Source: Schmidtea nova
Lineage: Eukaryota
Assembly (NCBI GenBank): GCA_044892505.1
Contig: CM097882.1
Coordinates: 254,448,001 to 254,512,000 of the forward strand
DNA: 64,000 nt
Reading direction: 5' to 3'
Under the pieces are notes generated by a model, which worked only from the letters and a program-made list of their open reading frames with translations, was not told the origin of the DNA and made no database searches. This document shows positions 1 to 63,471 of this stretch, one piece after another. Position 1 is the first letter of the stretch. Each line of letters begins with the position of its first letter. The translations under genes and the position numbers were made by a program.

Positions 1-375
1 TCTTTGTATTTTCAATGTCTTTGTTAATATTGCACATGGATTGCAATGTCTTTGTTCATATTGCACAAGAATTGCATATGAATTGCAAAGTCTTTGTTCA
101 CGATGCACATTTATTGCAATGTTTTTGATGACTCATATTTGTGTTAAAAAAATTTGTGTTAAAAAAATTTGAAAAAAAATTTTTGGCGCGAAAAAAAATT
201 TTGAAAAAAAAGTTTTGGCGCGAAAAAAAAATTTATGAGTCATTGATGACTCATCGATGAGTCATCAAAAAAAATTCTACCCCCTGGGGAGGGGTCTTTG
301 TTCTTTTTTCCCGCCCACGCCACACACGCAATGAGTCATACTGTCTTTGTTCCCGGCTCCACACATCTACCTACT
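1..375. mobile_element. Right terminal inverted repeat/subterminal region of a Polinton/Maverick copy extending upstream of the window
   Basis: Ends ...CCCGGCTCCACACATCTACCTACT at 375, the reverse complement of the AGTAGGTAGATGTGTGGAGCCGGG terminus at 53484. Shares the ATGA(G/C)TCAT, TTTCGCGCCAAA and AACAAAGAC repeats. 3' flank is TATTAG. Confidence 0.92.
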
Positions 376-27218: not shown

Positions 27219-27653
27219 ATTTTAACCCATTGTTCTAGTGTTTCAATAAAGGAACATGACAGTTTCGATCCCATAATGCCTAATCTATACACCTGAATAT
27301 ATACCGGCAAACAACTAGGATCAATTAAGAGTTTTGTCACTATATTTTGATTGTCATAATTACGTTTTGAAAAATAAAATTTATCCAAACTTGTTTCTTG
27401 AAGTTTTCTTAACAAATACTACAGTAAATGGATTTGATTTTACTCTTAACAACTTATAAACATTTTTACATATAAATTTGCTGTCTTAAAATTTTTATCA
27501 GGGAAAAATATTCACTTGTCTTAAAAATTTTTGATCTATTATCTGGGAAAAATGAGTTCGAAAAAAGATCAAAAATGAAGAAGATTAAAGATTTTAATAT
27601 TTTAATAGATGAGATATTAAAATTGATTAAAAACCAATGGATTACACAATTAC

Positions 27654-30198
27654 CTAATCTTGACAATCCTTGTCCTCGGCAGTAAATATAAATGGCTATT
27701 CCTCCAACAACGATAACGATCAACATTATAGAAACGACTAGGAGTACCAAAATTATCGCATTGTTTGGCAATCCATTAGATTTGTTGGGAGTTCTAGGAT
27801 AATCTTTCGGGTTGATGTATTTAGAATTCATGCTGTTTTCATTGCTTCTATCATAAGAATCCTTTGGTTTTAAATAACGAATATACAAAGTTGTGGTTGT
27901 CGCCAATGAAGGCGTGCCTTGATCGCGAGCTTCAACGACCAGGCGATCTGGGTTTTTAACTTTGCTATCCAATTTTTTATTCAAAATAATCTGACCATCA
28001 CTTTGAATGGAAAACAATTCTTTAGTGTAATTCTGGTTTGCAAAGTTGTAGATAACTGATCCATTCAGTCCAAAGTCATCATCAGTTGCTTTAACTTCAC
28101 CGACAATTGCACCTGCCACCATATCATCTGTAATATTGAGAAAGTAATAACCATTAACTATTGGAAACGTAAATTTCGGCCTATTATCATTCACATCCAA
28201 CACTTCAATATGAATTGTGGTCGTTGCTGTACGAGATGGATAACCATTGTCAATGACTTCAACTAACATTTCGATTTTGTCGACTTTTTCACGATCTATA
28301 TTTCCAAAATATATGATTTTACCATCACTGTACACTTGAATCTCATTTAGAGTTGATCTCGATTTCACTTTAAACATAAATGTCCCATTCTGTCCAATGT
28401 CTCTATCAGAAGCGTTGAGGTTTCCAATATTGAAATGATTATGATCTTTGTCCCAGCTTTCAATGATTTTAAACGAATGCGTCGAGCTGATTTCTGGTGT
28501 GTTATCATTAACATCTAACACAATGATTCGGATTTTGCACGAGTCGTTAAGTGTCGGTTCTCCATTGTCTTTTGCTTCAACAGTGAATTCATATCGATCT
28601 TTCACCTCTCGATCGAGTATCTTGTTCAAATGAATTTGTCCATTGTGATTAATACCGAAAGTATCTTTCACTTCATAATCACCATTAATTGAATACGTTA
28701 TAATATTATTAGGACTCGAATCACTATCTCTCGCAGTGACACTTCCGATTTCATGTCCGATTTTGGCATCTTCTGATATTGAAAACGTTTTGAATTCATT
28801 TTCAAACCGTGGTGGATTATCGTTTTCATCCGAAATGAAAATAGTTATAATTTCACTTGAACTCATTGTCGGCGTACCATTATCGCTGCAGATTATTTCC
28901 ACAGAATACCGAGAGGTTTTCTCTCTATCAAAAAACGTTCCGGGAATGCTGTTTAAAAGGAAAATTTTTTTCTGACCACCATTCTCCATTGGAATTGAAT
29001 ATATTGAATCCAAACTAACATAATTCGTGTCATTCAATGAACAACTGAATTCACTATTAATCCCTTGATCCTCATCGATTACCGTGATCCTTGTCACCAA
29101 AATCTTTGATTTTTCATTTTCCTTTATCTTTAAACTTGAACTATGCACTTTTATTACGGGCTTATGATCATTGCAATCTCTAATATCCAACTCAATTGTC
29201 GTTTCATTGCTTCTGCCTTCCCCATCGGCAGCAATCACAACAATTGATGCTTTATTCTGTTTGAATGATTTCAAAGCTCCAATATTCAAATAAAGAATAC
29301 TATCCGTTATATAAAAGATCCTTATTATCATTTCATAATTCGGGGAATTCTCGCTAATTTTGAATCGAATTTGTCCTCCTACGGTTTGTGGATCGTCTTT
29401 GTCTTGGGCATTCAATTGGAGGATTTTTGCTTCTGTCGTACATTCGGAAATCTCTTTCCGATAAGGAAGTCCCACCCATTGGGGAGTGTTGTCATTAACA
29501 TCGGTTATTTCAACAGTTATTCGGCATTTGCCTTGATTTCCACTGCCATCACTGGCGTAGAGATGGAATTCAAAACTTTTAATATTCTCTCGATCTAGAT
29601 CACCGACTACTTTCAAATAAGGATTACGATTGCTTGGATTATTAATTAACTTAAAGTATTGTTCATATATCGAAGAACCGATAGACTTTAAATAGTAATT
29701 TTTAACTCCGAATTTTTCACTATCTCTGTCTTTCGCTACAGGCAAAGGGAACTCAGTTAATCTCGCGACGTTTTCCGGGATTTTAATTGTCTTTTCATCA
29801 GGTTGAAACGATGGAAAGTTATCATTGATATCGATGATTTCGATTTGCAGTTCGAAGATTTGGTTTTCAACAAAAATTAAATAATTCAAAAATGCACCTG
29901 CCGAACACTTATTAATTGGTTGGCAGATTTCTTCTCTGTCTATTGCTGACTGAACCCAAATGTCGCCTTTTTTCGAATCAATACTGATTAAATTTCGACC
30001 GAAAATGTTTGACTTTTCCGACTCTAATACAAATGATTTATTTTTCAGATTGTCTGTAGATTTTGTTTGATTTTGAATTAATTTAATCAAATTCCCAATC
30101 GGACTGTTTGGTTTTTGATTTTCTTCAACAGATAAATACAATTTCACAGAAAATACAGTTTTCATAACTGTATAAAATAAAAATAGCTGCCATAACAT
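27654..30198 (-). CDS. Protocadherin (7 cadherin repeats, delta-1-like): signal peptide, ectodomain and TM in one exon
   Basis: Signal peptide; repeated DRE, DxD and DxNDNxP motifs; TM ILVLLVVSIMLIVIVVGGIAIYIYC. Donor AG|GTAATT at 27654/27653, so the ORF-track tail to 27466 is probably intron read-through. Confidence 0.96.
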
Positions 30199-36538: not shown

Positions 36539-39500
36539 TGTTGGGCCAGCCAAATAGGGCCTGCAAGTAGATGAATTAAAAATAATAAATATATAAATAA
36601 AAATAGTAATTACCCAGAATCGAAACAAGACCTGAAAGATAAAAATGAAGAAAAATAGATAAGTATCAATAAAAAACAGTAATAACAAAAATATCTACGA
36701 ATTACCATTGAGAGCAGGGAAGGCGAGATACCTGAAAACAATTACAATTAAGTCACAAAAAACATTAATAATAAAAGTACATAAATTTAATAATTATTAC
36801 ATGCAATAACGTATTAAGACTAGGAATGCATAAAGTAAAGAGAAATCAACTAATGAAAAATAAATAAATTACCTGAAAACGCAAGTCACCTTCAAATAAG
36901 TAACCGAATTAAATAAAACAAATATTTGAGAAAATATTTACCCAACTGGAATAGAAATAATTTCTGAAAAATGGAAATAATTTAAAGTATGAATTGTTTG
37001 GTAAACAAATAAATATTTACCAATTAGTATAGGAATAAAGCCCTCTGATTGGCTGCCCGAAACTGTCAACTGGTATAAATACCAGTGTTGAAATCAGTCG
37101 AATAGACTTATACCTATATACCTTTTGAGAAGTGTTAGACAAAGTTTTGAGACATATTTTTGTGAACTGATCGATCATTGTGTTTTGAAATCATTTGATA
37201 TCGTAACGATTAGTGTACTTACCTTTGTGGAGTTAACTACAGAAATAAAAGGTATTTATTGGTTATAATTGTTATGATTGTTATGATTGTTATTTTTTGA
37301 TTATTATTCGGTTAACAACTCATTGTTTTTATTCAAAATCGATAAGAGCACGTCCTGATGGTCTCGCGACCTAATGGGCAAAAATTGGCTTCTCGTTCCG
37401 ACTCCTTTTGGGAAGTTGGGTGATGCGGCAGAGGTATTCTTGCGGGTAGAAGGTGACATGTTCAGAGATACCAACAATACTGAATTGGGTTAGATCCCAT
37501 AAAAGTAATTGTAAGTGCATAAATATTTACACGAGCGACTAATACGAAATTTTCCGAATTAATCGAATTGTTTACAACTACGAAAAACGAAGGTGAAATC
37601 AATAATAGTCGTTAACAAATAACCTTGAAGAGAGACCAAATTTTGGATCAACTCCTTGTGGTATAGGGTTGCTGCAGTTATTGCTATTAGTCGAAGGGTT
37701 GAGTTGATAGACATTATCTTTCTCTACCTAGATGTAAATATCGATTTAAAGCAGTTATTGACATAAGTGATTTATATACGGGGAAATCATATAATTGATC
37801 CAGTTATTTTTCTTTTTCCCAGAGCATTGATGGTAAGGTGATAATTCAGTTTAATTTATTCGTCGATAAACATTTTTTAAATTTGTAGGATATTGAAAAT
37901 GCAAAGAAACGCTCAACGATCTAGGTACCTCGTTTATTTTCGGAATGGAAGAATTTTGGCCGCTCAAAGATCTAGCACAAAAAGGGCGCGACGACGCCCA
38001 TCACCACAAGTGGATGTGGCGACACCAGTTCAAATCACCAACCCCATTCGGGATATTGGAAAGAGATACGGACGATATATGATATGAAGATGGTCTCCGA
38101 TGGCCCTCCACAGTCAGAACCCGATAGCGCCAAATGGTTCGTAGTCCTCTGAGATGAATCCAACGTGCCGCATGGCTCGTATTATTCAGCGATATTAAGG
38201 TTCAGGAGTTCAGCGCCCTCAGATTCATATTATTAGATAGACCGTGTCACCTGGTTACTGGAGAGCTCCAGGAGTACTCTAACCTCCCATTCAAGTTCCA
38301 GGAAGGATGGAAGGAAAAATCTAAATGGGCAGCACATATACTGATTCAGCGGATCTTTTTGTACAATTCATATCTCTGCTGGAAGCCCAACTAAAGGATT
38401 TATGGCACGGATGGAATTGCCAAAACGGAAGCCGAATGTATGCAAGACTGGATCTGCGACGTCCGATACGACGAACGGGATTTTATTCGTTACTCAAGCA
38501 AAATTAATGAACCATAATTGACTGTGTGATTTGTTTATTTTAATAATTAATCTACAGTTGATAGTTAATTTTAGTTTTGAGTTTGAATGGTGTTAGTATG
38601 ATGTGTTCGTTTTAGAAAATGGTCAGTATGTTTGAATTGATACTTGTTCAGTATAACTGATGACGTTTGGTGTGTGCATAGAGTATAATAATTCAGGGGA
38701 TAATGACAATGAGTAGAGAAAAACCATTTGAAATTAGGATGTTTTTTTGGAATATACTAAGGGAAAGGGTATTAGGATAGAAGGGGGCATAATAGACCAA
38801 ATTTTTGAGTGGCGATAATTAACACAAAATATGTATATTTTAATTGTATATGCAAAGACATATCAAAGTGACCAAGGAAGTGCGACAGTTGACCGCCAAA
38901 CTGAGGGACAATAATTAAATGCTAACGAAAAAGGTGGCCCGTTTAATGCAGTTCGACGGGGAGCTATGTCGAACCAGGTTTACTCCGTCAGAAATGAAGG
39001 CTGCGATGCAAAGTATCGACAGGTTGAATCAAGTCCTGAGCGAGCATGCGAAGGAACTGTCAGCAACCCAACTAGAATTAAATCGATGCCTCAGAACCAT
39101 TTCATCGGAGTTCATAACGCAGCACCTCACAAATCAAATTCGGCCAATCACATTGGAGAAATGGACGAACAGCAGATTATGGACAAATGAGACTCAACCC
39201 GATTTTCCGTCGACCAACCAGCTCACATCGTCAGCGGAAATTCTCGCTGACCTGCCGAAGTCGAAGTCGAAGAAACGAAACTGAGTCGAGAGCGTTGAGC
39301 TTTTGCCGGACGACTCAGCATACAAGTGGATTTATTGAGGGGATTGTTTGAGAAACAGCTGATAAGTTTAATTGACCCCAACATGTTTTGTGAATTAACG
39401 TATATCTCAAACCTTGTTTGTGTATGATTTCAATTGGATATGGATGAAGTGTTTGTTTGATGAATTTGTGTATTAAATAGTAATTTTAGATACGACAACA

Positions 39501-39820
39501 AAAGGTCTTCTATCAACCGAACGAACGCGTATGGACAAGAGGGTTAATAGTAACTACCTAGATTGCTCACCTGCCCTCTTGACATACACCCGTTGGTGCA
39601 GTTTCAACGTGAGGTCCAATTAGGGGTATCTCACGGGCACCATCGCGCGGTTTACAATTTTACCCTAATAAAACATCCATAAACTCAATGTTCTTAATTG
39701 CTTAACTATCTTAGGTTCCTATAAGTTACTTAAATAATAGATCTGGATTTGATTTTTCTAATTTTTTGAAGACCATCAGCAGATTATGGACAAATGAGAC
39801 TCAGCCCGATCTTTCCTTTA
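36539..39820 (+). mobile_element. Unclassified, relatively GC-rich cassette with a CCAAT/TATA promoter and orphan ORFs (possibly part of a large retroelement)
   Basis: Starts TGTTGGG; GATTGG at ~37049 and TATAAATA at ~37073; ORF 38919-39284; a 40-bp internal duplication (39170 vs 39777). Confidence 0.35.
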
Positions 39821-40409
39821 GCCCGTTTTAAAAATTTAGAGAGGTCTTTTGTTTATTTTTGCCAAACGTTTTCCAACAGTGCTTAAAAGTTGAAAAGTAC
39901 AGGATTAAAAGTGCGGGTGAAAATAGAATGCTAGGAAAATTGCAATGTATAATTTCTAGATCAACACCAAGACAGCTTGATTATTGTTCGTTGCAATTAC
40001 ATTGGACTCGTATTCTTCTTTAGTCACAATATTGTTTTTTTATAAATAACAAGATTTAATTCCAAAAATTATATTCATAAAATCATATTATTCAAACAAT
40101 ATTAATCGATAATATTATTTGAATATTTTTTTCTGAAGCATCGATAATTTTTCTGAGCTAAGATTCAACATTATGTAATTCAGCATACTTATTATATATT
40201 ATATTTTCAATTTTATTTAAAATTAATATATTTTACTCTTATTTTTTGAATTTAATAAAATTTTTAACCTTAATTTTTAATAATAATATCAATAATTACC
40301 ATAATGGTAAGACTATAGATCAAAATCTTTTTAAACAAGTACTAAATATTTCGGTACAGCTTTTATCAAGTGTGTATTTAAACCCATATTTATTAAATTT
40401 AATTTATCA

Positions 40410-47472: not shown

Positions 47473-47736
47473 TTCCTGTACAGTACACTAAGTAATGCAT
47501 TGAAAAATGGGAAACTATGATGACGTATTTATTTTGGATTTGGTTTTGAAAGTATTTTGAATACGATTACTATTTGGAATATTATCAATAAGTAATTTTT
47601 TAGATGGTGTATAACTGGTTTTTAAAACTGGTTTCTTTGTTTTCTTTGTAAATGGTTTCTTTAAAACTAGTTTCTTTCCCGGTTTCTTCATTTTTCTAGC
47701 CTTTATCAAGCGCGAACGTTTTACTCGAGATTTCAT
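47473..47736 (-). pseudogene. Decayed homologue of the Polinton basic core protein
   Basis: MKSRVK...LIKAR.KK.GKK and FPFFNALL match ORF 59241-59765; truncated by the gap. Confidence 0.85.
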
Positions 47737-47762
47737 TTACATGATTGATAATATACATTTAA

Positions 47763-48386
47763 TTAACTTTGTTTATAAACCATGGTTCTTTCTTTTATTG
47801 AAAATAAATGTTCTAACTCTTAAATCATCACTATATTGTTGTGTGAAATCAAGGAAAAGATATCCACGAAGAGCTTTTGTAGCCTCTTCAAACGCATCAA
47901 TCAAGAAATTCCGATTAGAAGGGTATGCTTGTCTTGCAAGAAAATCAATAACTGTTGCATCTCAAGTATTTTTAAAAACAACAAGATATTAAACATTTAA
48001 ATTTATGGTTCGATGACTGCCACCCTGATGAAATAAATTCTGAGTAATAAAAATAACTGTAACTCCTTTGTGTTTAGCAATGTTTGTAAATAAATTATTA
48101 AAGTTCTTTTCTTTGTTTGCTTCTTGATACAAGACATCAATAATAATCACATCCCCTTCTCTTAATCTAGATGACCAGTTTTTATCGAAACCTTTTTATG
48201 ATTGTCATTTTTATTTTATAAAATTGATCGAGTCATTTCATGTTCATCATCAACACCCTTATGCTAATAAATTTTATTAAACTTTGACTTGAATAATTTT
48301 GATTGTAATAATTTACAAACAAATAATGTTTTTCCACTGCCGCTCGGTCCAACAATTTGAAACACTGCATCATTTCTCAATTACAT
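47763..48386 (-). pseudogene. Polinton packaging ATPase pseudogene
   Basis: Collinear homologue of 58597-59220 (LRNDAVFQIVGPSGSGKT, IIDDLYQEANKEK, HQGG); premature stop at codon 2 and indels. Confidence 0.93.
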
Positions 48387-48477
48387 ATGTCAAATTTTCT
48401 TAATTTATTATTATTGTTTATATTTGTTTTAAATAATAGTTGTTTTTATTATTGTCATATTTAAAAATTTTTCATTA

Positions 48478-48945
48478 ATGATTAGCAACATAAATTATAA
48501 GGGTAAGACTGATATATCCCACTTGAATTTTCCAAATGGGAAATCACAGTAAATGGTGGATAGAAGTGGTAAATATCTGATAATATATTTTAAAACAGGT
48601 AGATTTAGAATTATGGGATACAAGGAATTTATTAGCGGTGAAAAAGTAAAGATTTATGATTTAACAATCCAATCAATTACTGTAATGGTAAACTTAGGAT
48701 TTAGTTGTTATTTAAATGATTTGGCTAAATTAATAGAATGTGTTTACGAGCCAGAAATATTTCCAGCTTTGAGATATATAAAATATAATCCCATGTGTGT
48801 TTGCAAGCGGTAAAGTAGTTATATTAGGTTTAAAAACTAGGTACTATTTAAATATAGTTGATAATATTATTACCGATATAAAATCAATTTTTGAAGATAG
48901 AGTTTTTAGATTTCAACATGTGATATAGATATTAACATGTGACTG
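48478..48945 (+). pseudogene. TBP-like gene of the decayed Polinton copy
   Basis: Collinear homologue of 58036-58503 (YEPEIFPALRY); one nonsense codon and an 8-nt deletion near 48799. Confidence 0.9.
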
Positions 48946-52589: not shown

Positions 52590-53483
52590 TGTTACGGTAA
52601 ATGTACATTACCAGGTAAATGTATATATTTACCAGTAAATGTATACATTAACTGCAAGATTTGGCAAATGTACATATAACATACATTTACCGATTATTTA
52701 GTAATCATATATACTTTTACCTAGAGGTAATGGTAAAAGTGTAAAGGAATAAAGTTAATTATTCGAGTTTAAATCATTTTTTAAGGTTATGTTTATTATA
52801 CCAAAACCAAAATTTCTTAATAATTGTTTTAAGGTTATGTTTATTATTTTATGTTTATGTTTTTAAGCGTAAATTAAAACTCAACAAATTTTCTAGGTGC
52901 ATTATTAAACAGCAATTATTGTAAATATTACAATTTTAAGTAAGTTTTATTATAGTTCATGATTTACGTAATAATTTTATAAACCTCAATACTAAACCTC
53001 AATATTGCAGAAATGAATCAACGAGAAGAATTTAACAAACAGTTAAATCAGATAATCGCGAGTAAAAATAAAAATAATGTTTATATGAGTAAGAAAATAT
53101 ATGAACAAATCTTAAAGGAAGTGGTAAATGCTAAACAAAAAGAACATTTCAAAACACCACTCGACTATCGGCGTCTACAACGCTATGATATTTTAAATAT
53201 GGGCAAAGAAAAACGTTTAATTTTCCCAGTTGGTAACAGCAATGGAGACACAAGCGTCAAATATTTTGTTACAACAGAAGAACTATTTGATTTAATACAC
53301 AATGCTCATGAAAGTATCGGACATGGTGGGCGCAATAGGCTCATAAAAGAGTTAAGTAATAAATACAAAAATGTCACAACTGAGGCAATAATGTTGTATT
53401 TAAGTTTATGTACAGCTTGCCAACAAAAATCAAAAGGTAAAAAAAAGGGCATAGTAATAAAACCAATAATTTCTAATGAATTG
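52590..53483 (+). mobile_element. Ginger2/TDD-like transposon left part, interrupted by the Polinton
   Basis: TGT start with GGTAAATGTA subterminal repeats. ORF 53013 has HESIGHGGRNR...CTACQ (integrase HHCC, KRBA2/SCAND3-like) and is cut at KPIISNEL, just before the expected catalytic core. Confidence 0.75.
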
Positions 53484-53519
53484 AGTAGGTAGATGTGTGG
53501 AGCCGGGAACAAAGACATT

Positions 53520-53772
53520 ATGACTCATGCGTGGGCGGAAAAAAAGAACAAAGACCCCCCCTCCCCGGGGGGGGGTAGAATTTTTTTTGATGAGTCATCG
53601 ATGAGTCATCGATGAGTCATATTTTTTTTGATGAGTCATAAATTTTTTTTCAAATTTTTTTTTCGCGCCAAAAATTTTTTTTCAAATTTTTTTTTCGCGC
53701 CAAAAATTTTTTTTCGAATTTTTTTTCGCGCCAAAAATTTTTTTTTTTTCAAATTTTTTTTTTCGCGCCAGA
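53520..53772 (+). promoter_or_regulatory. TIR motif array: 5 AP-1 consensus palindromes and 4 E2F consensus sites
   Basis: ATGA(G/C)TCAT at 53520, 53590, 53601, 53612, 53631; TTTCGCGCCA(AA) at 53661, 53693, 53724, 53761. Function is inferred. Confidence 0.65.
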
Positions 53773-55058
53773 AATTTATTTTTTTTAGACAAATTTTTTT
53801 CAACAAATTTTTTAAGACAATTTTTATTTTAAGTCAAATTTTTTTTTCGACAAAATTTTTTTAACACAAATTTTTATTAGACAAAATTTTTTAACACAAA
53901 TTTTTTTAAGACAAATTTTTTTTTAACACAAATTTTTGAAGACAATATTTTTTTTTTAAGTCAAATTTTTTAAAACCAATTTTTTTTTACAAAAATTTTT
54001 TTATTTAGGACAAATTTTTTATAACACAAAATTAGAGTCATCAAAAATATTTGCAACAGGTGTGCAAACTAAACAAAGACATTGTTGTATGTGTGCATGT
54101 TGAATTAATTATTTGTCAAGTATGAAGCTTTTGCACATCAAAACCATCACAGAAGAGGTTCTGCTTCCAGGGTTCTGATCGCAATGTTCTGCTACTAATG
54201 TTTTTATTTATTCATTTAATTATTATTATTATCTTTCAAACTAAAAAAAGACTTTGCAACACGTGTGCAAGTTAACAAAGACATTGCAACACACGTGCAA
54301 GGACTTTGCAACACGCGTGCAACATGAACAAAGACATTGCAACATGCATGCAAACTAAACAAAGACATTGCAATACACATGCAACAATTTGAAATACATG
54401 TGCAACATAAACAAAGACATTAAAAAGCCAAAATTTATTTATAAATATGTCGTTGTGTACGTGTACAAAATTTAGTTTCAAAATTATTTACATCTGAATT
54501 ATTACTCGGAATATTATTCATAGGAATATTATTCATTGTAATATTATTCATCGGAATACTAGTATTTTTCGGAATATTATTCTTTGGAATATTTGACATC
54601 TTCTCCAACCGTATGGATGCCGATAACATCATTATAATTATTAATATAAATAAACTTATATAATGTAATACAATTTATGTTTTTTCGTTTTCAACTGTTT
54701 GATTTTGGTATCTGACTTCATATTCTTTTTTAACAAAGGTTTGATTGATACATTTTAATCGTTCAACTATTTTAATCATTATTTTGTTAATCATTTTTTC
54801 AATATCATTATTAATCACATTATTTTTGGAAGGACATTGATTACATTATAATTTAATTTGACTGCATTCAATGTTTAACTCGCGCAAGTACTATCTTGTT
54901 TTCGAAACGGATGGGATGATTGACAATCTTCCAAAGCTTGTTCTCCTTCAGTATTGTGAATACATAATAATAAAATAAGTATATTTAATTTCATCTTAAA
55001 AACAAAAACTAATATAAAAACTAAATTTGTTCATACTAAAATATTTATTAAAAAACAA

Positions 55059-55475: not shown

Positions 55476-55998
55476 GTTGTAAATTGTGACAATATTTTAT
55501 AAAAAGTCTTTGTATTTATACTGATGACTGGATGTCTTTGTCCAATCATATTCATGCATTTGTTTTGCACACACTATGCATATGTATTGCAATGTCTTTA
55601 TTGTATGTGTGCATGTTTAATTATTTAGTATTTGTCAAGTATGAAGCTTTTGCACATCAAAACCATCACAGATTAGGTTCTGCTTCCAGGGTTCTGATAA
55701 TAATGTTGTTATTTATTTAATAATTTATTTATTTATTTATTTCACAATTATTATTATTGTCTTTCATAAAAAACTTTCTTACTAATTATTTAATAAAAAC
55801 TAATTACTTTCTTATATACAATTAATAAAAAAACTACTACTAAAAATTGATTTAATAAAAAAAAAACTATTATTATTTAAATAAAAACTACAAATGAAAA
55901 AAAAAAACTTTTATTAGACTAAACTAAAATCACAAAAAACTAAAACTAAAACTAAAAAATAAGTTATTACATAAAACATATACACATCAAATTGTACA

Positions 55999-56611
55999 TT
56001 ATTGTTCATCGTTTTCTTTTTCTTTTTCTTCTTCTTCCTCCTCTTCTTCAACACCATCAGCCTGTCGATGGCATTCGGCACAATCGGGTGATTGTGGAGA
56101 TTCTGCACAATCAGGTGATTCCGATGGATACGGACCATCTAGAGATGGTGCATGTTCCATTGAGCAATCATTTTTTGATTGATCATCTTCATCAATCGGC
56201 TCCGGAGTAGAGTTGGGCCATGTTTCCTTGATTTGCTCCTCCTCCTCCTCATCGATTTTGTCCATTTGTTGGACATCATAGAGTTTGAGGGAATTCCTCA
56301 AAACCCATATGTTAAACTGCTGGATTCTTTCCACGCACAGAATGTGCTCAGGTACCACTGGCAAATCGGTATTCTGGCTGGTCATGTGGTCCAGCACAAT
56401 CTGATTGATATCTATTCCTGTCAGGACCATAATTTTATATGGGAACATCTCCGGAGCCGTGTAGACCAGAGCCGGCATAAGATTTGGGAATAGTTCCTCC
56501 AGCTTCCGATATATAACATTCATTAATTTTTCTAAATAAAAAAATATTAAATATGAAAAATTAAAAATTAAAACCCTTACGGCTTTTAATTAAAGTTTGG
56601 GTTAGCGACAT
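55999..56611 (-). CDS. Acidic orphan protein, copy 1 (exons 56611-56581, 56531-55999)
   Basis: ATG exon MSLTQTLIKS joins in frame via a 49-nt GTAAG...TTTAG intron (56580-56532) to the 174-aa ORF; Glu/Asp-rich C-terminus. Confidence 0.8.
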
Positions 56612-57244
56612 AATTGTGGATATAAACTATGTGAGATTGTTCATAGTATATATATCAAAGAAACACACATGATTTGAAACATACATAATGAACCAATCAG
56701 AGTGAAGCATGCACAACATGTCTTTATTCTATCGATACACACACACAGAGCCAATCAGAATCGTGCATTTCTAATGTCCAATCATATTCATGCATTTGTT
56801 TTGCACACACTATGCATATGTATTGCAATGTCTTTGTTGTATGTGTGCATGTTTAATTATTTAGTATTTGTCAAGTATGAAGCTTTTGCACATCAAAACC
56901 ATCACAGATTAGGTTCTGCTTCCAGGGTTCTGATAATAATGTTGTTATTTATTTAATAATTTATTTATTTATTTATTTATTTATTTCACAATTATTATTA
57001 TTGTCTTTCATAAAAAACTTTCTTACTAATTATTTAATAAAAACTAATTACTTTCTTATATACAATTAATAAAAAAAACTACTACTAAAACTTGATTTAA
57101 TAAAAAAAAAACTATTATTATTTAAATAAAAACTACAAATGAAAAAAAAAAAACTTTTATTAGACTAAACTAAAATCACAAAAAACTAAAACTAAAACTA
57201 AAAAATAAGTTATTACATAAAACATATACACATCAAATTGTACA

Positions 57245-57860
57245 TTATTGTTCATCGTTTTCTTTTTCTTTTTCTTCTTCTTCCTCCTCTTCTTCAACAC
57301 CATCAGCCTGTCGATGGCATTCGGCACAATCGGGTGATTGTGGAGATTCTGCACAATCAGGTGATTCCGATGGATACGGACCATCTAGAGATGGTGCATG
57401 TTCCATTGAGCAATCATTTTTTGATTGATCATCTTCATCAATCGGCTCCGGAGTAGAGTTGGGCCATGTTTCCTTTTTTTGCTCCTCCTCCTCCTCCTCA
57501 TCGATTTTGTCCATTTGTTGGACATCATAGAGTTTGAGGGAATTCCTCAAAACCCATATGTTAAACTGCCGGATTCTTTCCACGCACAGAATGTGCTCAG
57601 GTACCACTGGCAAATCGGTATTCTGGCTGGTCATGTGGTCCAGCACAATCTGATTGATATCTATTCCTGTCAGGACCATAATTTTATATGGGAACATCTC
57701 CGGAGCCGTGTAGACCAGAGCCGGCATAAGATTTGGGAATAGTTCCTCCAGCTTCCGATATATAACATTCATTAATTTTTCTAAATAAAAAAATATTAAA
57801 TATGAAAAATTAAAAATTAAAACCCTTACGGCTTTTAATTAAAGTTTGGGTTAGCGACAT
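57245..57860 (-). CDS. Acidic orphan protein, copy 2 (exons 57860-57830, 57780-57245)
   Basis: Same structure; intron 57829-57781. Confidence 0.8.
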
Positions 57861-58035
57861 AATTGTGGATATAAACTATGTGAGATTGTTCATAGTATAT
57901 ATATCAAAGAAACACACATGATTTGAAACATACATAATGAACCAATCAGAGTGAAGCATGCACAACATGTCTTTATTCTATCGATACACACACAGAGCCA
58001 ATCAGAATCGTGCATTTAGTGCATCGATATTGCAG

Positions 58036-58503
58036 TCATGAGTCACATGTTAGTATGAAATCAACAAAGGCTTTATCTTCTATAATTGATTTTATATCGT
58101 TAATAATATCATCAACTATAGTACTATAGTCTTTGTTTTTTAATCCTAATATGACTAATTTCCCACTTGCAAATATATTTACACACATGGGATTATATTT
58201 GGTATACCTCAAAGCTGGAAATAATTCTGGCTCGTAAACACACGGTATCAATTTCGATAATTCATTCAAATTACAAATAAATCCTAAATCAGCAGTTACA
58301 GTTATCGATTGTATTGTTAAATCGTAAAACTCAACTTGTTCGTCACTAATAAATTCCCTGCATCCCATTATTCTATATCTTCCTGTTTTAAAGTATATTA
58401 TTGGGTATTTCCCAGTTCGATCTACAATTTGCTGGGGTTTTCCTTTTGGAAATTTCATGTGTGATACATCAGTCTTACCCTTATAATTAATGTTTCTAAT
58501 CAT
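58036..58503 (-). CDS. TATA-binding-protein-like protein (155 aa)
   Basis: IQSITVTADLGFICNLNEL...YEPELFPALRY...VNIFASGKLVILGLK matches TBP repeat 2 (IQNMVGSCDV...YEPELFPGLIY...LIFVSGKVVLTGAK). A degenerate repeat 1 is visible (IRNINYK...IYFKTGRYRIMGCR). Confidence 0.9.
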   Translation of the reverse strand: MIRNINYKGKTDVSHMKFPKGKPQQIVDRTGKYPIIYFKTGRYRIMGCREFISDEQVEFYDLTIQSITVTADLGFICNLNELSKLIPCVYEPELFPALRYTKYNPMCVNIFASGKLVILGLKNKDYSTIVDDIINDIKSIIEDKAFVDFILTCDS

Positions 58504-58596
58504 TACTGAAAATATTTTTAAATGAAATAATTACTTTGAGAACAGGTATTTAAAACAAATATAAACAATAATATTAAGAAAATATAATTTTTAAAT

Positions 58597-59220
58597 ATGG
58601 AATTAAGAAATGATGCAGTGTTTCAAATTGTTGGTCCGAGCGGGAGTGGAAAAACTTTATTTGTTTGTAAATTATTGCAATCGAAATTATTCAAATCAAA
58701 ATTTAATAATATTTATTGGCATAGGGGTGCTGACGACGAAAGCGGAATGACACAAGATCAGTTTTGTAAAATAAAAATGACAATCATTAAAGGTTTCGAT
58801 AAAAACTGGTCATCTAGATTAAAACAAGGTGATGTGATTATCATTGACGACTTGTATCAAGAAGCAAATAAAGAAAAGGATTTCAATAACTTATTTACGA
58901 AAATCAGTAGACATAAAGGTGTTACAGTTATTTTTATAACTCAGAATTTATTTCATCAGGGCGGTAATCATCGAACTCGTAATTTAAATGTTCAATATCT
59001 TGTTGTGTTTAAAAATCCTAGAGATGCAACAGTTATTGATTTTCTGGCAAGACAAGCTTATCCTTCTAATCGTAACTTTTTGATTGAAGCCTTTCAAGAT
59101 GCTACAAAATCTCCTCATGGATATATTTTCCTGGATTTTACTCAACAATGCAGTGATGATTTACGAGTTAGAACTGATATTTTTAACCCGGAAGGAGCCA
59201 TGGTTTATAAACAAAGTTAA
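58597..59220 (+). CDS. A32-like (FtsK-HerA superfamily) packaging ATPase
   Basis: Walker A GPSGSGKT, Walker B IIIDD, and SRH...ITQNLFHQG...RTRNLN motif typical of Polinton ATPases. Confidence 0.96.
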   Translation: MELRNDAVFQIVGPSGSGKTLFVCKLLQSKLFKSKFNNIYWHRGADDESGMTQDQFCKIKMTIIKGFDKNWSSRLKQGDVIIIDDLYQEANKEKDFNNLFTKISRHKGVTVIFITQNLFHQGGNHRTRNLNVQYLVVFKNPRDATVIDFLARQAYPSNRNFLIEAFQDATKSPHGYIFLDFTQQCSDDLRVRTDIFNPEGAMVYKQS

Positions 59221-59240
59221 TTCTGTTTGCAATCGTAATC

Positions 59241-59765
59241 ATGTTAATGAAATCTCGAGTAAAGTTTGAGCCATTGATAAAGGCTAGAACAAAGAAAGCG
59301 GGAAAGAAAACAAAGAAACTATTTACAAAGAAATCTATAAATAAATCAAGAAAGAAATCAACATCCAAGAAAATACTTATGGATAATATTCCCAAAAATA
59401 ATCAAATTAATTTGAAATCTAATGCTAAACAAGCACATCATCGGAGTTTACCGTTTTTTAATGCATTACTTAAAGCCCCCTCCGTTAGAAGAATGGGTAT
59501 TCTTCAATCGTTTCCTAGTTACGTCATCGATGATTTACTCTCTATTTTAATTAAAGTCGTGCGAGGTAAAATGAATCTAACTCCATCTAATCGCCGTGTT
59601 TTGAACAAGCATAAAAAACCATTGTTGTCGCTAGTAAACACAAAAAATAAAAAACTTATGTGCAAAGTAATATATAAACAACAAGGTGGTTTTATCGCAG
59701 CATTGTTACCATTAGCATTATCTTTATTGGGAGGTGCTGGTTTATTGGGAAAAAGAAAGTCATAA
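59241..59765 (+). CDS. Basic core protein with a pX-like C-terminus (probable start ATG 59247)
   Basis: Lys-rich N-terminus; ends QQGG-FIAALLPLALSLLGG, resembling adenovirus pX xxGG|hydrophobic tail. Confidence 0.75.
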   Translation: MLMKSRVKFEPLIKARTKKAGKKTKKLFTKKSINKSRKKSTSKKILMDNIPKNNQINLKSNAKQAHHRSLPFFNALLKAPSVRRMGILQSFPSYVIDDLLSILIKVVRGKMNLTPSNRRVLNKHKKPLLSLVNTKNKKLMCKVIYKQQGGFIAALLPLALSLLGGAGLLGKRKS

Positions 59766-59768
59766 ACA

Positions 59769-59990
59769 ATGGGTCAATCACTACCTAATTTAAATTTAAA
59801 TTTTAAATCTTCTTGTTGTAATGGAGAAGATCTGGACGAACCCAAAAGACGACGCCGGTTTCGGTGGAGTCGAAAAGCTAAGGAAAAAAGCACAGAAGTC
59901 GAAACAACAGACACAAAGTTGGTTATCGGGGCAACTTGCATACAGTCTAAACAAACCGATGTTGAAACGGTTTCCAACTCGAGCATATAA
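59769..59990 (+). CDS. Small ORF overprinting the integrase N-terminus
   Basis: ATG 4 nt after the core-gene stop; MGQ...SSCC...KRRRRFRWSRK; overlaps the integrase ORF in another frame. Confidence 0.4.
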   Translation: MGQSLPNLNLNFKSSCCNGEDLDEPKRRRRFRWSRKAKEKSTEVETTDTKLVIGATCIQSKQTDVETVSNSSI

Positions 59991-60866
59991 AACATATAGA
60001 ATCAATGATTTGTGGCAAATGGATTTGATGGAAATGATTCCGTATTCCAAAATTAACAAGGGGTACAAGTATATTTTAACATGTATCGATGTTTACAGTA
60101 GATTTGCTCGAGCAATTGGAGTCAAATCTAAATCTGCTAATGACATGGCAATCGCTATCAAGACAATGATGAAAAAGGATCGGCCAACTAATTTACAAAC
60201 TGATTTGGGTAAAGTTAAATATAATTTTATATATTTATTATTTTTTTAGGAAAGGAATTTTACAACAGTAAAGTCAAGGAAGTTATCAAGGGAATAAATC
60301 ATTATTCAGTATTCTCACAATTCAAAGCCGCTCATGTCGAGAGATTTAATCGAACTTTGCGTGATCGATTGAAAAAATACTTTGTTTTTAAAGGCAATAA
60401 AACCTGGATTAATGTCTTACCTCAATTGATTCATAGTTATAATCATAGTGCTCATCGGGGTATAAATGGTAGGAAACCGGCAGAAGTAGTTGATACTGAA
60501 AATATTGTGAGTGAAGTGAAAGTAAAGAAACCAAAATATAAAGTTGATGATCATGTTCGAATTAGCAAGATTAGTACATCGCCATTCGTTAAAAATTTTG
60601 ATAATAATTGGAGTGATGAGGTATATCAAATATCGAAAGTCAACACAGTGCAGAATCCTGTCATGTATACTATTCGTGACTCTGATAACAATATAATCAG
60701 CGGCAAATTCTACGAACAAGAATTACAAGTTATTCCTCCACCTACGATATTTAGAATTCAAAATATTTTGAAGACTAAAATGGTAGGTAAGGATAAACAA
60801 TACTATGTCAAATGGCATGGATATAAAGAACCATCATGGATCTCGTCAAAAAATCTAGTAAAGTGA
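59821..60866 (+). CDS. Retroviral-like (rve) integrase with C-terminal chromodomain (exons 59821-60208, 60250-60866)
   Basis: GFGGVEKL, WQMDL (D), QTDLG|KEFYN (D, restored by a 41-nt GT-AG intron), VERFNRTL (E), YYVKWHGY...SWI. Confidence 0.95.
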
Positions 60867-61895: not shown

Positions 61896-62255
61896 ATGTA
61901 CAGTAATAGCCAAACTGGTGGTGAATTACCGTATTTTGTCGGTAAACAGTATGGATCAGGTTGGTTGAAAACTATTGGGAGATTTGCACTTCCAATTCTT
62001 AGACGACTAGGTAATTTCGGAATGAATACTGCTAAGGACGTTATCATGAAAGATAATAAAATATTACCGTCATTGAAAACCAATGCTTTGGCAGCAGTTA
62101 ATAAAGCTATACCTGCTGTAACACAAATGCTTCCTACAATTACAAGTATGTTTACAAAAAATAAGGAACCGGAATCTGTACCGGTAGGACCAAGACGTAA
62201 ACGAAAGCGTATAAACAAACGAATGAAAGGTCATGGAACTATATTTGAAGAATGA
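61896..62255 (+). CDS. pVI-like protease-processed virion protein
   Basis: QTGG and QYGSG sites followed by an amphipathic WLKTIGRFALPILRRLG helix; basic C-terminus. Confidence 0.75.
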   Translation: MYSNSQTGGELPYFVGKQYGSGWLKTIGRFALPILRRLGNFGMNTAKDVIMKDNKILPSLKTNALAAVNKAIPAVTQMLPTITSMFTKNKEPESVPVGPRRKRKRINKRMKGHGTIFEE

Positions 62256-63471
62256 TTTGCGGTAAATCTGAATTATTTCTTTTTGATCGACCATCACCTC
62301 AAGCAGTTATTGAATATGGGGCGTTTGAAGATGTGTTTCCAATGAATTCAATTACAGATAGTAGAAATGATGTTGAATTTTACATTAATGGTTCTCAAAC
62401 CGAATATTTGGATTTGAACAATACATTATTGTCCGTTACAATCAAGGTTGTAGATAAAGATAAAAAACAATTAGCTGATGTGAGTGATGTAGTTCCTAAT
62501 AATTATTTGTTTCATACACTTTTCAAAGATGTAATTCTCGGATTTAATAATATAAAAATCGAGGGTGGAAACAATACATATGCGCACAAGGCAATAATCG
62601 AAACTATTTTAAATTATACGAATGATGCGAAAGAAACATGTCTTACTCCAATGGGATATGGTTCCGCTGACGATCGGAAAAAATGGATCAAGGGATCTAA
62701 ACTTTTCAACATGTGTTCATCATTACAACTCGATTTTATGGATCAACCTAAATACTTACTTCCCGGAGTTAATGTACATATTAGATTGAAGCGATCTGAT
62801 TCTGCATTATCATTGAAATCGGCAGCTGGGAAACCAATAATCCAAATAGTTGATGCAAAATTAATGGTAAGAAGAGTTCGATGTGATTCTTCAGTATTGG
62901 CCGGTCATCAAATTGGTTTAAATAAAAAACATGCAATTTATCCATTAAAATCAAAAGAAATTTATCGTTTGCAATCGGTAAAGGGGCATCGTCATTTTAC
63001 AAGGAGCAAATATTTGGAGATAGACGAATGCCTAATTTCATTCTTGTGGCTTTTCAATCCGAAAATCAATATAATGGGTCTTATACCGAGTCAACATCTA
63101 CATTCAAACATTTTAATGTGACTTCATTAACATTGTCGAAAAATACCGATTATCGTGAAACATATACCCAGGATTTTGAAAATGATAATTTTAGTGCATC
63201 ATATATGCAAAGTCTTGTCCGAAATCTAGGTTATTTGGATAAAAACTCGAATTGTGGTATTGGTCTAGATGAATTTAAATCTAGTTATCCATTCTTTACA
63301 TTTGTTCTGGCTCCCGATTTTGATTTGAATCAAAGCCAAATCCCTCAAAACGGAAATTTACGACTCGATATAAAGTTTGCAAAACCTATTGAGGAACCGG
63401 TTCATGTAGTTATATATGGAGTTTTTGAAAATGAAGTTCAAATTACTGCCAATCGAACAATATTAGTTTGA
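62252..63471 (+). CDS. Major capsid protein (double jelly-roll), split by one frameshift near 62963
   Basis: KSELFLF...EFYINGSQTEYLDLNNT, YLLPGVNVHIRLKR, FDL..., GNLRLDIKFAKP. Adding 1 nt at ~62963 joins ORFs 62252 and 63028 (EIxSFAIGKG...MPNFILVAF). Confidence 0.93.

What the first reader, a model, noticed from the sequence alone, without database searches (positions are those of the whole stretch)
58036..58503. Polinton-encoded TATA-binding-protein homologue, conserved in two diverged copies
Seen: an intact 155-aa ORF with a well-conserved TBP repeat 2, including the acidic YEPE stirrup and both Phe positions (ELF, IF), plus a shortened, degenerate repeat 1. It is head-to-head with the virion operon. 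The diverged element at 48478-48945 has the same gene in the same position, so it is a stable family gene, not a one-off capture. Established: in TBP the stirrup glutamates bind TFIIB and the Phe pairs kink TATA DNA; TBPs occur in NCLDVs but are not part of the Polinton core gene set. Inference: either a virus-specific promoter factor for the late/virion genes or a TFIIB decoy that reprogrammes host Pol II.
Basis: partly seen in the sequence, partly recalled or inferred. Interest (0 to 1): 0.9.

Follow-up and report, generated by a model that had tools for sequence, protein, structure and literature searches.

The report
Reduced TBP homologue in a Polinton
A virus-like transposon (Polinton/adintovirus type) in an animal genome carries an intact gene for a stripped-down TATA-binding protein, one of a large unnamed family, which probably lets the element start transcription of its own genes with the host's RNA polymerase II machinery.

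Summary
The 155-aa ORF at 58036-58503 (-) is real, intact and a true TBP homologue (Pfam TBP E 1e-13; AlphaFold2 pLDDT 92; all 44 significant PDB fold matches are TBPs). Its C-terminal lobe is a canonical TBP repeat. It keeps both DNA-kinking Phe and the two Glu that dock TFIIB. Its N-terminal lobe is a helix-less beta-sheet remnant. The gene lies 93 bp from, and divergent to, a packaging ATPase followed by an integrase, so it sits in a Polinton-like element.

It is not a one-off. At least 101 full-length relatives exist in public assemblies, all without a curated name. Those whose contigs I saw lie beside the same ATPase on PolB- and integrase-bearing contigs. The family runs from full two-lobed forms to this reduced form.

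Even so, dN/dS between the copies is 0.20.

The most likely function, inferred and not shown, is an element-specific promoter factor that bends DNA and recruits host TFIIB while escaping host TBP regulators. A "TBP" label already appears in the legends of published virus genome maps, so this is a new variant of a known kind.

The parts
58036..58503 (-). Intact 155-aa TBP-like gene (ATG to stop)
   Evidence: ORF list; Pfam TBP E 1.2e-13; PDB sequence hits are all TBPs; AF2 pLDDT 91.8, pTM 0.82; Foldseek gives 44 TBP chains at E<=1e-3
58336..58503 (-). N-terminal lobe (residues 1-56): reduced TBP repeat 1 made of strands only, with no H1 or H2
   Evidence: AF2 strands 2-10, 25-28, 35-38, 42-48 and no helix. 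hhalign pairs F38 with the second Phe of repeat 1, P23 with the first Phe and M46 with the central Thr. Family shares: F38 99%, P23 96%, M46 100%, N4 93%. pI 9.9
58036..58335 (-). C-terminal lobe (residues 57-155 plus stop): canonical TBP repeat 2 (S1'-H1'-S2'-S3'-S4'-S5'-H2') with an acidic tail
   Evidence: AF2 elements E63-72, H79-83, E88-90, E97-100, E107-111, E115-121, H127-153. E91, P92, E93, L94, F95 and F111 align with the invariant canonical residues and are 77-100% conserved in the family
58504..58596 (.). 93-bp divergent intergenic region between the TBP-like gene and the ATPase; candidate bidirectional promoter
   Evidence: Sequence; 75% identical between the two copies
58547..58573 (+). 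27-nt block identical in both copies, 24-50 nt upstream of the ATPase start, holding two TATA-like stretches; candidate core promoter and binding site
   Evidence: Alignment A3. The only two matches in the window are here and at 48409-48435 (-), with none in shuffles
58597..59220 (+). Intact 207-aa genome-packaging ATPase (Pox_A32/FtsK-HerA type)
   Evidence: Pfam Pox_A32 E 3e-7; 484 relatives at E<=1e-10, up to 89% identity
59241..59765 (+). 174-aa Lys-rich ORF with a hydrophobic C-terminus; function unknown
   Evidence: ORF list; no Pfam hit
59821..60866 (+). Retrovirus-type integrase (rve core plus C-terminal chromodomain), broken by at least one frameshift
   Evidence: Pfam rve E 2e-8 and Chromo E 4e-4 on two ORFs. 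Two open stretches in two frames are needed to span it. Relatives have one ORF of 341-343 aa
60836..61876 (+). 346-aa ORF of the same operon; function unknown
   Evidence: ORF list; no Pfam or PDB match; ORFs of similar size follow the integrase in relatives
61896..63471 (+). Further ORFs of the operon (119, 289 and 147 aa); the last gives a weak double-jelly-roll capsid hint
   Evidence: ORF list; PF21738 DJR-like_dom E 0.012, below the cut-off. Whether these frames are intact was not judged
57245..57772 (-). 175-aa acidic ORF just downstream of the TBP-like gene on the same strand; function unknown. Duplicated at 55999-56523
   Evidence: ORF list; no Pfam hit; duplication
55539..58020 (.). 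Near-perfect (97-100%) tandem duplication of a ~1245-bp unit, ending 16 bp from the TBP stop codon
   Evidence: the repeat finder families D2, D3, D5, D8, D10; self-BLAST
53589..54600 (.). Arrays of short tandem repeats; candidate terminal region of the element (left end not proven)
   Evidence: TRF and the repeat finder
47473..48945 (.). Copy B: an inverted 1473-bp island between two assembly gaps, homologous to 58036-59472
   Evidence: N runs and one 80.5% HSP; no other part of the element elsewhere in the window
48478..48945 (+). Copy B TBP-like pseudogene (2-3 frameshifting indels, 1-2 premature stops); it abuts the gap
   Evidence: dN/dS against copy A is 0.20 at dS 0.68
47763..48386 (-). 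Copy B packaging-ATPase pseudogene (3 frameshifting indels, up to 4 stops)
   Evidence: dN/dS against copy A is 0.13

Best explanation
The ORF encodes a virus-lineage paralogue of the TATA-binding protein. It belongs to a large family carried by Polinton/adintovirus-like elements.

Shown: it has the TBP saddle fold. Its C-terminal lobe is canonical and keeps both DNA-kinking phenylalanines and the two glutamates that contact TFIIB/TFB in every cellular TBP. Its N-terminal lobe is reduced to a basic beta-sheet without the two helices. The family is under purifying selection and sits beside the packaging ATPase.

Inferred mechanism: the protein is made from the accessory ('early-like') arm of the element. 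It binds an AT-rich, TATA-like but non-canonical element in the element's own promoters through its concave sheet and bends the DNA. The 27-nt block conserved upstream of the ATPase-integrase-capsid operon is the candidate site. The protein then recruits host TFIIB, and so RNA polymerase II, through the conserved C-terminal stirrup. The element itself encodes no TFIIB or RNA polymerase.

In this subgroup the N-lobe helices are missing. In cellular TBP the N-terminal lobe is the platform for TFIIA, TAF1, Brf1/2, Mot1 and NC2. Their loss would make the factor independent of TFIID and insensitive to host factors that evict TBP.

In this particular locus the element is decaying (its integrase is frameshifted), so the gene may no longer act here.
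For: Identity and fold: Pfam TBP E 1.2e-13. PDB sequence hits are only TBPs. hhalign against canonical TBPs gives probability 98.7%, E 4.5e-16, across both lobes. The AF2 model has pLDDT 91.8. All 44 Foldseek PDB matches at E<=1e-3 are TBPs, including the TBP-TFIIB-DNA complexes 1c9b, 1vol and 1ais.

DNA-binding surface under selection across 101 family members: F38 99%, F95 99%, F111 100%, N4 93%, R44 99%, K122 K/R 98%. Family median pI is 9.4, against 9.8 for canonical cores.

TFIIB surface: E91 96%, P92 92%, E93 98%, L94 L/I 98%. These align with the invariant E-P-E-L of canonical TBPs. Ravarani et al. 2020 (PMC7221094) show that these two Glu contact a conserved Arg and Thr of TFIIB/TFB, and that the N-terminal lobe is the platform for TFIIA, TAF1, Brf1/2, Mot1 and NC2.

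Altered specificity: the DNA-facing canonical residues I146, V155, L157, N111 and T167 (A2 numbering) are R99 (88%), C107 (89%), N109 (100%), S66 (96%) and L119 (65%) in the family. T76 is M46 (100%), and the first N-lobe Phe is P23 (96%).

No TFIIB-like or RNA-polymerase Pfam hit appears in the window ORFs or in the gene tables of relatives.

Context: the gene is 93 bp from, and divergent to, the ATPase operon. In relatives it lies next to the same ATPase on contigs with PolB and an rve/chromo integrase, beside a Bcl-2 homologue in four of them. TBP-family and ATPase hits share their longest-contig lengths in three more cases.

Selection: dN/dS is 0.20 for both lobes (0.16 and 0.22) at dS 0.68.

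Candidate site: a 27-nt block is identical in both copies, within a spacer that is otherwise 75% identical.

Precedent: beta- and gamma-herpesviruses use a viral TBP mimic to drive late (virion) genes from TATT-type promoters (PMC12529657).
Against: Nothing here shows DNA binding, TFIIB binding or expression; the mechanism is inference from conserved residues. One of the four intercalating Phe is replaced by Pro, and three of the four central polar contacts are changed, so DNA bending and recognition may differ a lot from TBP. The conserved 27-nt block contains ordinary TATA-like sequence that host TBP could use unaided, and a 27-nt identical run has roughly a 4-20% chance in a 93-bp spacer at 75-80% identity. 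The window's protein has pI 7.6, lower than the family, because of an acidic tail. The gene is not universal in Polintons or adintoviruses, so it is dispensable for the general life style. This copy of the element has a frameshifted integrase and the other copy is a pseudogene, so activity at this locus is doubtful. Gene orientation relative to the ATPase varies among relatives.
Confidence: 0.55

Rival explanations
1. Competitor or decoy. The protein does not activate the element's genes. Instead it interferes with host transcription, either by occupying host TATA-type promoters or by titrating TFIIB (or Brf factors). Lacking the N-lobe platform, it would resist removal by Mot1/NC2. The result would be host shut-off or reprogramming.
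For: The TFIIB-contacting Glu pair and the DNA-facing Phe are conserved. The N-lobe helices, part of the lobe used by host regulators, are absent (PMC7221094). In relatives the gene sits beside a host-manipulating Bcl-2 homologue.
Against: A pure TFIIB sink would not need conserved DNA-facing residues, and a pure promoter blocker would not need the TFIIB Glu pair; both sets are 96-100% conserved. The family-specific polar substitutions on the DNA face (R99, N109, S66) argue for a distinct target sequence rather than host TATA boxes.
Confidence: 0.2
2. Architectural DNA bender outside transcription. The saddle bends AT-rich DNA at the element's termini or origin to help protein-primed replication, integration or packaging, much as host DNA-bending factors help adenovirus origins (recalled, not checked here).
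For: The TBP fold is a general minor-groove bending module. The gene lies next to the packaging ATPase. Repeat arrays that could be terminal binding sites lie in the same arm.
Against: This does not explain the near-invariant TFIIB-contact Glu-Pro-Glu-Leu stirrup. Ravarani et al. find that this signature is absent from bacterial TBP-lobe proteins, which have no TFIIB partner.
Confidence: 0.1
3. Fossil at this locus. Whatever the family does, this copy is an inert remnant whose reading frame has merely not yet been hit by a mutation.
For: The integrase of the same element is frameshifted. Copy B is a pseudogene. There are no expression data.
Against: 155 codons remain open in a 29% GC genome, where a stop is expected about every 12 codons. 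The ATPase next door is also intact, and a 97-100% identical tandem duplication nearby suggests the region is young. This rival concerns the locus, not the family's function.
Confidence: 0.4
4. Recent capture of the host's own TBP or a TBP-related factor.
For: Polintons and adintoviruses do pick up host genes (Bcl-2 and IAP are noted in PMC8502044).
Against: Identity to canonical TBPs is only 21-26%. The family is deep: members are 37-59% identical to the window protein and there are 59 clusters at E<=1e-30. It has its own fixed signature (P23, M46, S66, N109), shared by short and long forms. Archaeal, microsporidian, plant, yeast and human TBPs score alike (5e-20 to 8e-16).
Confidence: 0.03

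Closest known systems
Cellular and archaeal TATA-binding protein (TBP; Pfam PF00352)
   Same: Same fold, covering both lobes. The C-terminal repeat is canonical. Three of the four intercalating Phe are kept, and the TFIIB/TFB-contacting Glu-x-Glu-Leu stirrup is kept.
   Different: It is 155 aa against a core of about 180 aa. The N-lobe lacks H1 and H2, and S2 by DSSP. The first N-lobe Phe is Pro. The central Asn/Thr contacts become Ser, Met and Leu. The DNA-facing I/V/L become R/C/N. It is encoded by a mobile virus-like element, and identity is 21-26%.
TBP-like proteins of giant viruses (Nucleocytoviricota)
   Same: They are virus-encoded TBP homologues and the best matches in the viral structure library (E 3e-7 to 8e-4, e.g. 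Heterosigma akashiwo virus, Terrestrivirus, Marseillevirus, an asfarvirus B263R homologue).
   Different: Those viruses carry their own RNA polymerase and TFIIB-like factor, with which their TBP stirrup co-evolves (PMC7221094). This element shows no such genes and keeps the cellular-type Glu pair, which points to the host TFIIB. Giant-virus proteins are larger (about 190-550 aa).
Herpesvirus viral TBP mimic (KSHV ORF24, EBV BcRF1, HCMV UL87)
   Same: A nuclear DNA virus without its own polymerase uses a TBP-fold protein with conserved Phe and a more polar DNA face to read a non-canonical TATT-type box and drive late (virion) genes (PMC12529657). There are weak fold matches to BcRF1 and U58 (E 0.0075-0.015).
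   Different: ORF24 is a large multidomain protein that binds Pol II directly and lacks the TFIIB-contact Glu. The Polinton protein is a bare saddle that keeps them. There is no sequence-level relationship, so this is a working analogy and not membership.
'TBP' gene label in MELD-virus maps (Starrett et al. 2021, PMC8502044; bioRxiv 10.1101/697771)
   Same: A TBP-like gene was drawn in at least one genome map of a midsize linear dsDNA virus with adintovirus-like genes.
   Different: It is only a legend entry ('similar to TATA binding proteins', 'homologs of host proteins'). There is no family, structure, residue analysis or function. I could not tell which genome carries it, or whether it belongs to this family.
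TBP-related factor TRF2/TBPL1 (recalled, not tested here)
   Same: A TBP paralogue with a changed DNA face that serves a separate promoter set.
   Different: As I recall, TRF2 has lost most of the intercalating Phe and keeps the full two-lobed, four-helix architecture and TFIIA binding. Here three Phe are kept and the N-lobe helices are lost.

Membership tests
TBP superfamily (PF00352, TBP-like fold) | Significant match to the TBP profile | tested here: met
   51.1 bits against a cut-off of 22.9, E 1.2e-13; hhalign probability 98.7%
TBP superfamily (PF00352, TBP-like fold) | Saddle fold matching solved TBPs over both lobes | tested here: met
   AF2 pLDDT 91.8; 44 TBP chains at E<=1e-3, 164-178 aligned columns, TM 0.58-0.71
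Canonical TBP (general transcription factor) | Two complete repeats, each S1-H1-S2-S3-S4-S5-H2 | tested here: not met
   The C-lobe is complete. The N-lobe has four strands and no helix. Spacings are 32 and 19 residues, against 41 and 34 in canonical TBPs. The long-form family member P0142 does meet this feature
Canonical TBP (general transcription factor) | Four DNA-intercalating phenylalanines | tested here: not met
   Three of four are kept: F38, F95, F111. The first N-lobe position is P23, 96% Pro in the family. F18 (79%) lies in the preceding loop and its role is unknown
Canonical TBP (general transcription factor) | Two stirrup glutamates of the C-lobe that contact TFIIB/TFB (C.L3.2 and C.L3.4 of Ravarani et al.) | tested here: met
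   E91 and E93 align with the invariant E138 and E140 of canonical TBPs; 96% and 98% conserved in the family; PMC7221094
Canonical TBP (general transcription factor) | Central Asn/Thr pairs and hydrophobic I/V/L DNA face that read the TATA box | tested here: not met
   N4 is kept. N111 becomes S66, T76 becomes M46, T167 becomes L119, and I146/V155/L157 become R99/C107/N109
Canonical TBP (general transcription factor) | Binds TATA DNA and nucleates a pre-initiation complex | not testable with these tools
   No binding or expression data
Polinton/Maverick element | Retrovirus-type (rve) integrase | tested here: met
   rve E 2e-8 and chromodomain E 4e-4 within 59821-60866; broken by at least one frameshift
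Polinton/Maverick element | FtsK/A32-type packaging ATPase | tested here: met
   Pox_A32 E 3e-7
Polinton/Maverick element | [quoted passage not shown] | not testable with these tools
   The window ends at 64000, inside the element. Contigs of relatives carry PF03175 DNA_pol_B_2
Polinton/Maverick element | Double and single jelly-roll capsid proteins and adenain-type protease | tested here: inconclusive
   Only a sub-threshold DJR-like hit (E 0.012); no protease seen in the part of the element inside the window
Polinton/Maverick element | Terminal inverted repeats | not testable with these tools
   The right end lies outside the window. Repeat arrays at 53589-54600 may mark the left end
Adintovirus (as defined in bioRxiv 10.1101/2024.03.25.586562) | Integrase with C-terminal chromodomain; PolB with OTU domain; BLAST-recognisable hexon | tested here: inconclusive
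   The chromodomain is present, though below the Pfam cut-off. PolB and hexon could not be tested in the window. Definition read
Herpesvirus vTBP (ORF24/BcRF1/UL87) | Large protein with a Pol II-binding N-terminal domain, a TBP-like middle and a DNA-binding C-terminal domain; no TFIIB-contact Glu | tested here: not met
   The protein is 155 aa with no extra domains and the Glu pair is present. Fold matches are weak (E 0.0075-0.015, TM 0.34-0.42).

The most novel reading that the evidence does not exclude
A small (roughly 15-20 kb) nuclear virus-like element of animals carries its own minimal general transcription factor. This would be a TBP reduced to the DNA saddle plus the TFIIB-docking stirrup. 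It would read an element-specific, non-canonical box and assemble Pol II initiation complexes independently of TFIID and out of reach of Mot1/NC2. The family would also record the stepwise loss of the N-lobe helices from a full two-lobed ancestor.
Probability: 0.4. Interest if true: 0.8.

Novelty: new variant of a known kind. Interest (0 to 1): 0.62.

Why it matters
Polintons/Mavericks and adintoviruses are thought to depend wholly on host transcription, and how they time early and virion gene expression is unknown. A conserved element-encoded TBP would give them a private promoter code. That would parallel the herpesvirus late-gene system but use a much simpler protein that apparently still uses host TFIIB.

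The protein is also a natural dissection of TBP. It shows which parts of the saddle can be dropped (the N-lobe helices) while the DNA face and the TFIIB stirrup stay under selection. The family has at least 101 members, none with a curated name, and offers a marker gene and a candidate promoter motif for annotating these elements.

Tried and rejected
1. Host identification. The 910-aa cadherin (27466-30198) has unnamed hits at 85% and 60% identity; the rest, including every hit that carries an organism name, are at or below 39%. The 'flatworm' host stays unverified.

2. Naming the family or its hosts. Cluster look-ups of ten TBP-family and three ATPase representatives gave no organism names, only automatic JGI 'TBP' labels.

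3. Origin. Archaeal TBPs were best with the single sequence. With the family profile, archaeal, microsporidian, plant, yeast and human TBPs score within four orders of magnitude, so there is no defensible affinity. I made no tree, because the non-family hits are unlabelled.

4. Capsid genes. PDB and Pfam searches of the ORFs to the right of the integrase gave nothing above threshold.

5. Fused domains as functional hints. Longer family members have Pfam-less tails. P0112 and P0182 are ordinary multi-repeat TBPs.

6. Rfam found nothing in the window. The bacterial-type promoter/terminator scan is uninformative here.

7. Recent host capture and a chance ORF were both rejected (see the rival explanations).

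8. A literature search for Polinton or Maverick together with TBP found only the Starrett et al. legend entries.
Full report
OBSERVATION

The window is AT-rich (29% GC). It encodes a 910-aa cadherin, so it comes from an animal genome. The species could not be named.

At 58036-58503 (-) there is an intact 155-codon ORF. At this base composition, 155 open codons have a chance of about 2e-6.

The product matches Pfam TBP (PF00352) at E 1.2e-13, well above the curated cut-off. Among solved structures it matches TBPs almost exclusively: 35 of the 36 sequences found at E<=10, with E 4e-17 to 4e-8. The one exception is a chance-level hit at E 1.9.

The stretch Y90-E91-P92-E93-L94-F95 and I110-F111 line up with the invariant Y-E-P-E-L-F and F-x-S-G of canonical TBPs (alignment A2; hhalign).

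STRUCTURE

An AlphaFold2 model built on 36 family sequences is confident (pLDDT 91.8, pTM 0.82).

- Residues 57-155 form a complete TBP repeat: S1'-H1'-S2'-S3'-S4'-S5'-H2'.
- Residues 1-56 form four strands and no helix.

Foldseek against the PDB returns 44 matches at E<=1e-3. All are TBPs, with 164-178 aligned columns, so both lobes of TBP are covered (TM 0.58-0.71).

The profile-profile alignment puts residues 15-52 on strands S2-S5 of repeat 1. F38 falls on the second Phe of that repeat. P23 falls on the first Phe. M46 falls on the central Thr.

The protein is therefore a two-lobed saddle whose N-lobe has lost H1 and H2. The distance from S1 to S4 is 32 residues against 41 in canonical TBPs. 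The distance from S5 to S1' is 19 against 34.

A FAMILY, NOT A ONE-OFF

The first protein search found 55 relatives, most of them 145-160 aa long. The closest 42 are 35-74% identical to the query (mostly 40-59%) and most cover about 90% of it. The remainder are weaker matches, including ordinary cellular TBPs.

An exhaustive profile search of 1.84 billion representatives gave 59 clusters at E<=1e-30. I could place 101 full-length members in one alignment.

None carries an NCBI or UniProt name. Some have an automatic JGI 'TBP' label.

Conservation by column over the 101 members:

| Position | Share |
|---|---|
| F38 | 99% |
| F95 | 99% |
| F111 | 100% |
| E91 | 96% |
| P92 | 92% |
| E93 | 98% |
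| L94 | 77% (plus I 21%) |
| M46 | 100% |
| S66 | 96% |
| N109 | 100% |
| R99 | 88% |
| C107 | 89% |
| P23 | 96% |
| N4 | 93% |

The family is a continuum in N-lobe length. Members of 172-178 aa have canonical spacings (42 and 32 residues) yet share the family signature P23, M46, S66, N109.

One of these long forms, P0142, folds into the full S1-H1-S2-S3-S4-S5-H2 x2 topology (pLDDT 96.4). It superposes on TBPs at TM 0.77-0.87 and 2-3.5 A.

The window's protein sits at the most reduced end. The simplest reading is a full viral TBP that progressively lost its N-lobe helices.

CONTEXT

Ninety-three bases upstream, and divergent, lies an intact 207-aa Pox_A32/FtsK-type packaging ATPase. It is followed on the same strand by:

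- a 174-aa basic ORF;
- an rve integrase with a chromodomain, whose frame needs at least one shift;
- further ORFs, one with a sub-threshold double-jelly-roll hint.

The window ends inside the element, so PolB and the right terminus are not visible.

The gene tables returned for three family members show the TBP-like gene next to the same ATPase on 13-22 kb contigs. Those contigs carry PF03175 PolB and an rve integrase, with a faint chromodomain hit in L005-L008. In four of them a Bcl-2 homologue sits beside the TBP-like gene. That is Polinton/adintovirus architecture.

Orientation relative to the ATPase varies: divergent here and in L005-L008, co-directional in L001 and L002.

Three more TBP/ATPase pairs share the same longest-contig length in the hit tables: P0010/P0213, P0059/P0260 and P0204/P0262.

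No TFIIB-like or RNA-polymerase domain appears in any of these tables or in the window ORFs.

THE SECOND COPY

The stretch at 48478-48945 belongs to a 1473-bp island between two N runs. It is inverted and 80.5% identical to 58043-59472. Nothing else of the element is nearby.

Its TBP frame carries 2-3 frameshifting indels and 1-2 premature stops. Its ATPase carries 3 frameshifting indels and up to 4 stops. It is a pseudogene fragment, so 'conserved in two copies' overstates the case.

The divergence between the copies was still accumulated mostly under constraint (Nei-Gojobori):

- TBP-like gene: dN/dS 0.20 (dS 0.68; 0.16 for the N-lobe, 0.22 for the C-lobe).
- ATPase: dN/dS 0.13.
- 5' part of the neighbouring 174-aa ORF: dN/dS 0.59.

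In the spacer, which is 75% identical overall, a 27-nt block is identical in both copies (58547-58573 and 48409-48435) and occurs nowhere else in the window. It lies 24-50 nt upstream of the ATPase start and holds two TATA-like stretches.

By my estimate, a run of that length has a 4-20% chance at 75-80% identity. It is a candidate core promoter, not a proven one.

MECHANISM

Shown: the TBP fold, the conserved DNA-facing Phe, the conserved TFIIB-type stirrup, purifying selection, and linkage to the packaging ATPase in Polinton-like elements.

Established knowledge:

- In TBP four Phe kink the DNA.
- Two C-lobe Glu contact a conserved Arg and Thr of TFIIB/TFB in archaea and eukaryotes.
- The N-lobe is the platform for TFIIA, TAF1, Brf1/2, Mot1 and NC2.
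- In giant viruses the stirrup co-evolves with a virus-encoded TFIIB.

Inferred: the element has no TFIIB or polymerase of its own, yet its TBP keeps the cellular-type Glu pair. The partner is therefore most likely host TFIIB and so Pol II.

The DNA face differs from canonical TBP at family-fixed positions. I, V and L become R, C and N. The C-lobe Asn becomes Ser. Both central Thr become Met or Leu. One Phe becomes Pro. From memory, the I/V/L positions correspond to the three residues changed in the yeast altered-specificity TBP of Strubin and Struhl (1992); I did not check this. The target is therefore probably a variant box, not the consensus TATA.

The missing N-lobe helices would free the factor from TFIID and from the factors that evict TBP.

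The nearest working analogy is the herpesvirus late-gene TBP mimic. It also keeps the Phe and has a more polar DNA face, but it binds Pol II directly and lacks the TFIIB Glu.

Conservation of both the DNA face and the TFIIB face argues for a bridging activator rather than a pure decoy or blocker. A competitor role, a replication or packaging bender, and simple inertness of this decaying copy remain open.

NOVELTY

Literature searches for Polinton or Maverick together with TBP found only one record. [quoted passage not shown]

Virus-encoded TBPs are well known in giant viruses, and TBP mimics in herpesviruses. I therefore file this as a new variant of a known kind. What is new is a large, unnamed, Polinton/adintovirus-linked TBP family with its own DNA-face signature, and a subgroup with a helix-less N-lobe.

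SLIPS AND LIMITS

(a) looked up contigs that encode three family members, before I knew what they were. I stopped and made no further look-ups or collection scans. I did not read or analyse the DNA of L001-L008 and used only the gene tables already printed.

(b) In my reasoning I briefly recalled short stretches of yeast TBP from memory. I used none of them. All residue mappings come from tool alignments.

(c) My first notebook entry gives ORF bounds inside two broken genes, which narrows down where the breaks lie. It stands as written.

(d) Alignment tools printed consensus lines.

Noticed in passing
window 55539-58020: A ~1245-bp unit is tandemly duplicated at 97-100% identity. It duplicates a 174/175-aa acidic ORF (55999-56523 and 57245-57772, both -) and ends 16 bp from the TBP stop codon. 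It could be a very recent duplication or an assembly artefact.
   Followed up: partly
window 53589-54600: Dense arrays of short tandem repeats: an 11-nt palindromic unit containing TGAGTCA (x3), 32-nt T-rich units with a CGCGCC core, 31/83-nt units with a repeated TGCAAC...GTGCAA motif, and a 15-nt array. They may mark the terminal region of the element or binding sites for an element factor.
   Followed up: no
window 53013-53492 (+): A 159-aa ORF with an Integrase_H2C2 zinc-binding domain (E 4e-5, just below the cut-off). It is probably a fragment of an LTR-type retroelement abutting the Polinton's left arm.
   Followed up: no
window 86-375 and 53484-54084: An inverted pair of about 80% identical repeats links the start of the window with the left edge of the element region. 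Translated searches also link 2-357 with 53502-54433. The repeat family is unidentified.
   Followed up: no
window 27466-30198 (-): A 910-aa single-ORF protocadherin-like gene with six cadherin repeats. Its closest database relatives (85% and 60% identity) are unnamed, and all remaining hits, including every named one, are at or below 39%.
   Followed up: partly
window 59241-59765 (+): A 174-aa ORF between the ATPase and the integrase. It has a Lys-rich N-terminal half and a Gly/Leu/Ala-rich hydrophobic C-terminus and evolves fast between the copies (dN/dS 0.59 over its 5' part). It may be a core or membrane-associated virion protein.
   Followed up: no
gene tables of L005-L008: Relatives carry a 125-aa Bcl-2 homologue between the ATPase and the TBP-like gene. 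This is absent from the window's copy, where the two genes are only 93 bp apart.
   Followed up: no
window 38001-40000: A local GC rise to 40% in an otherwise 25-33% GC window. Not examined.
   Followed up: no
proteins P0034, P0035, P0038, P0063, P0078, P0092: Some family members carry C-terminal extensions of 70-115 aa without any Pfam domain.
   Followed up: partly
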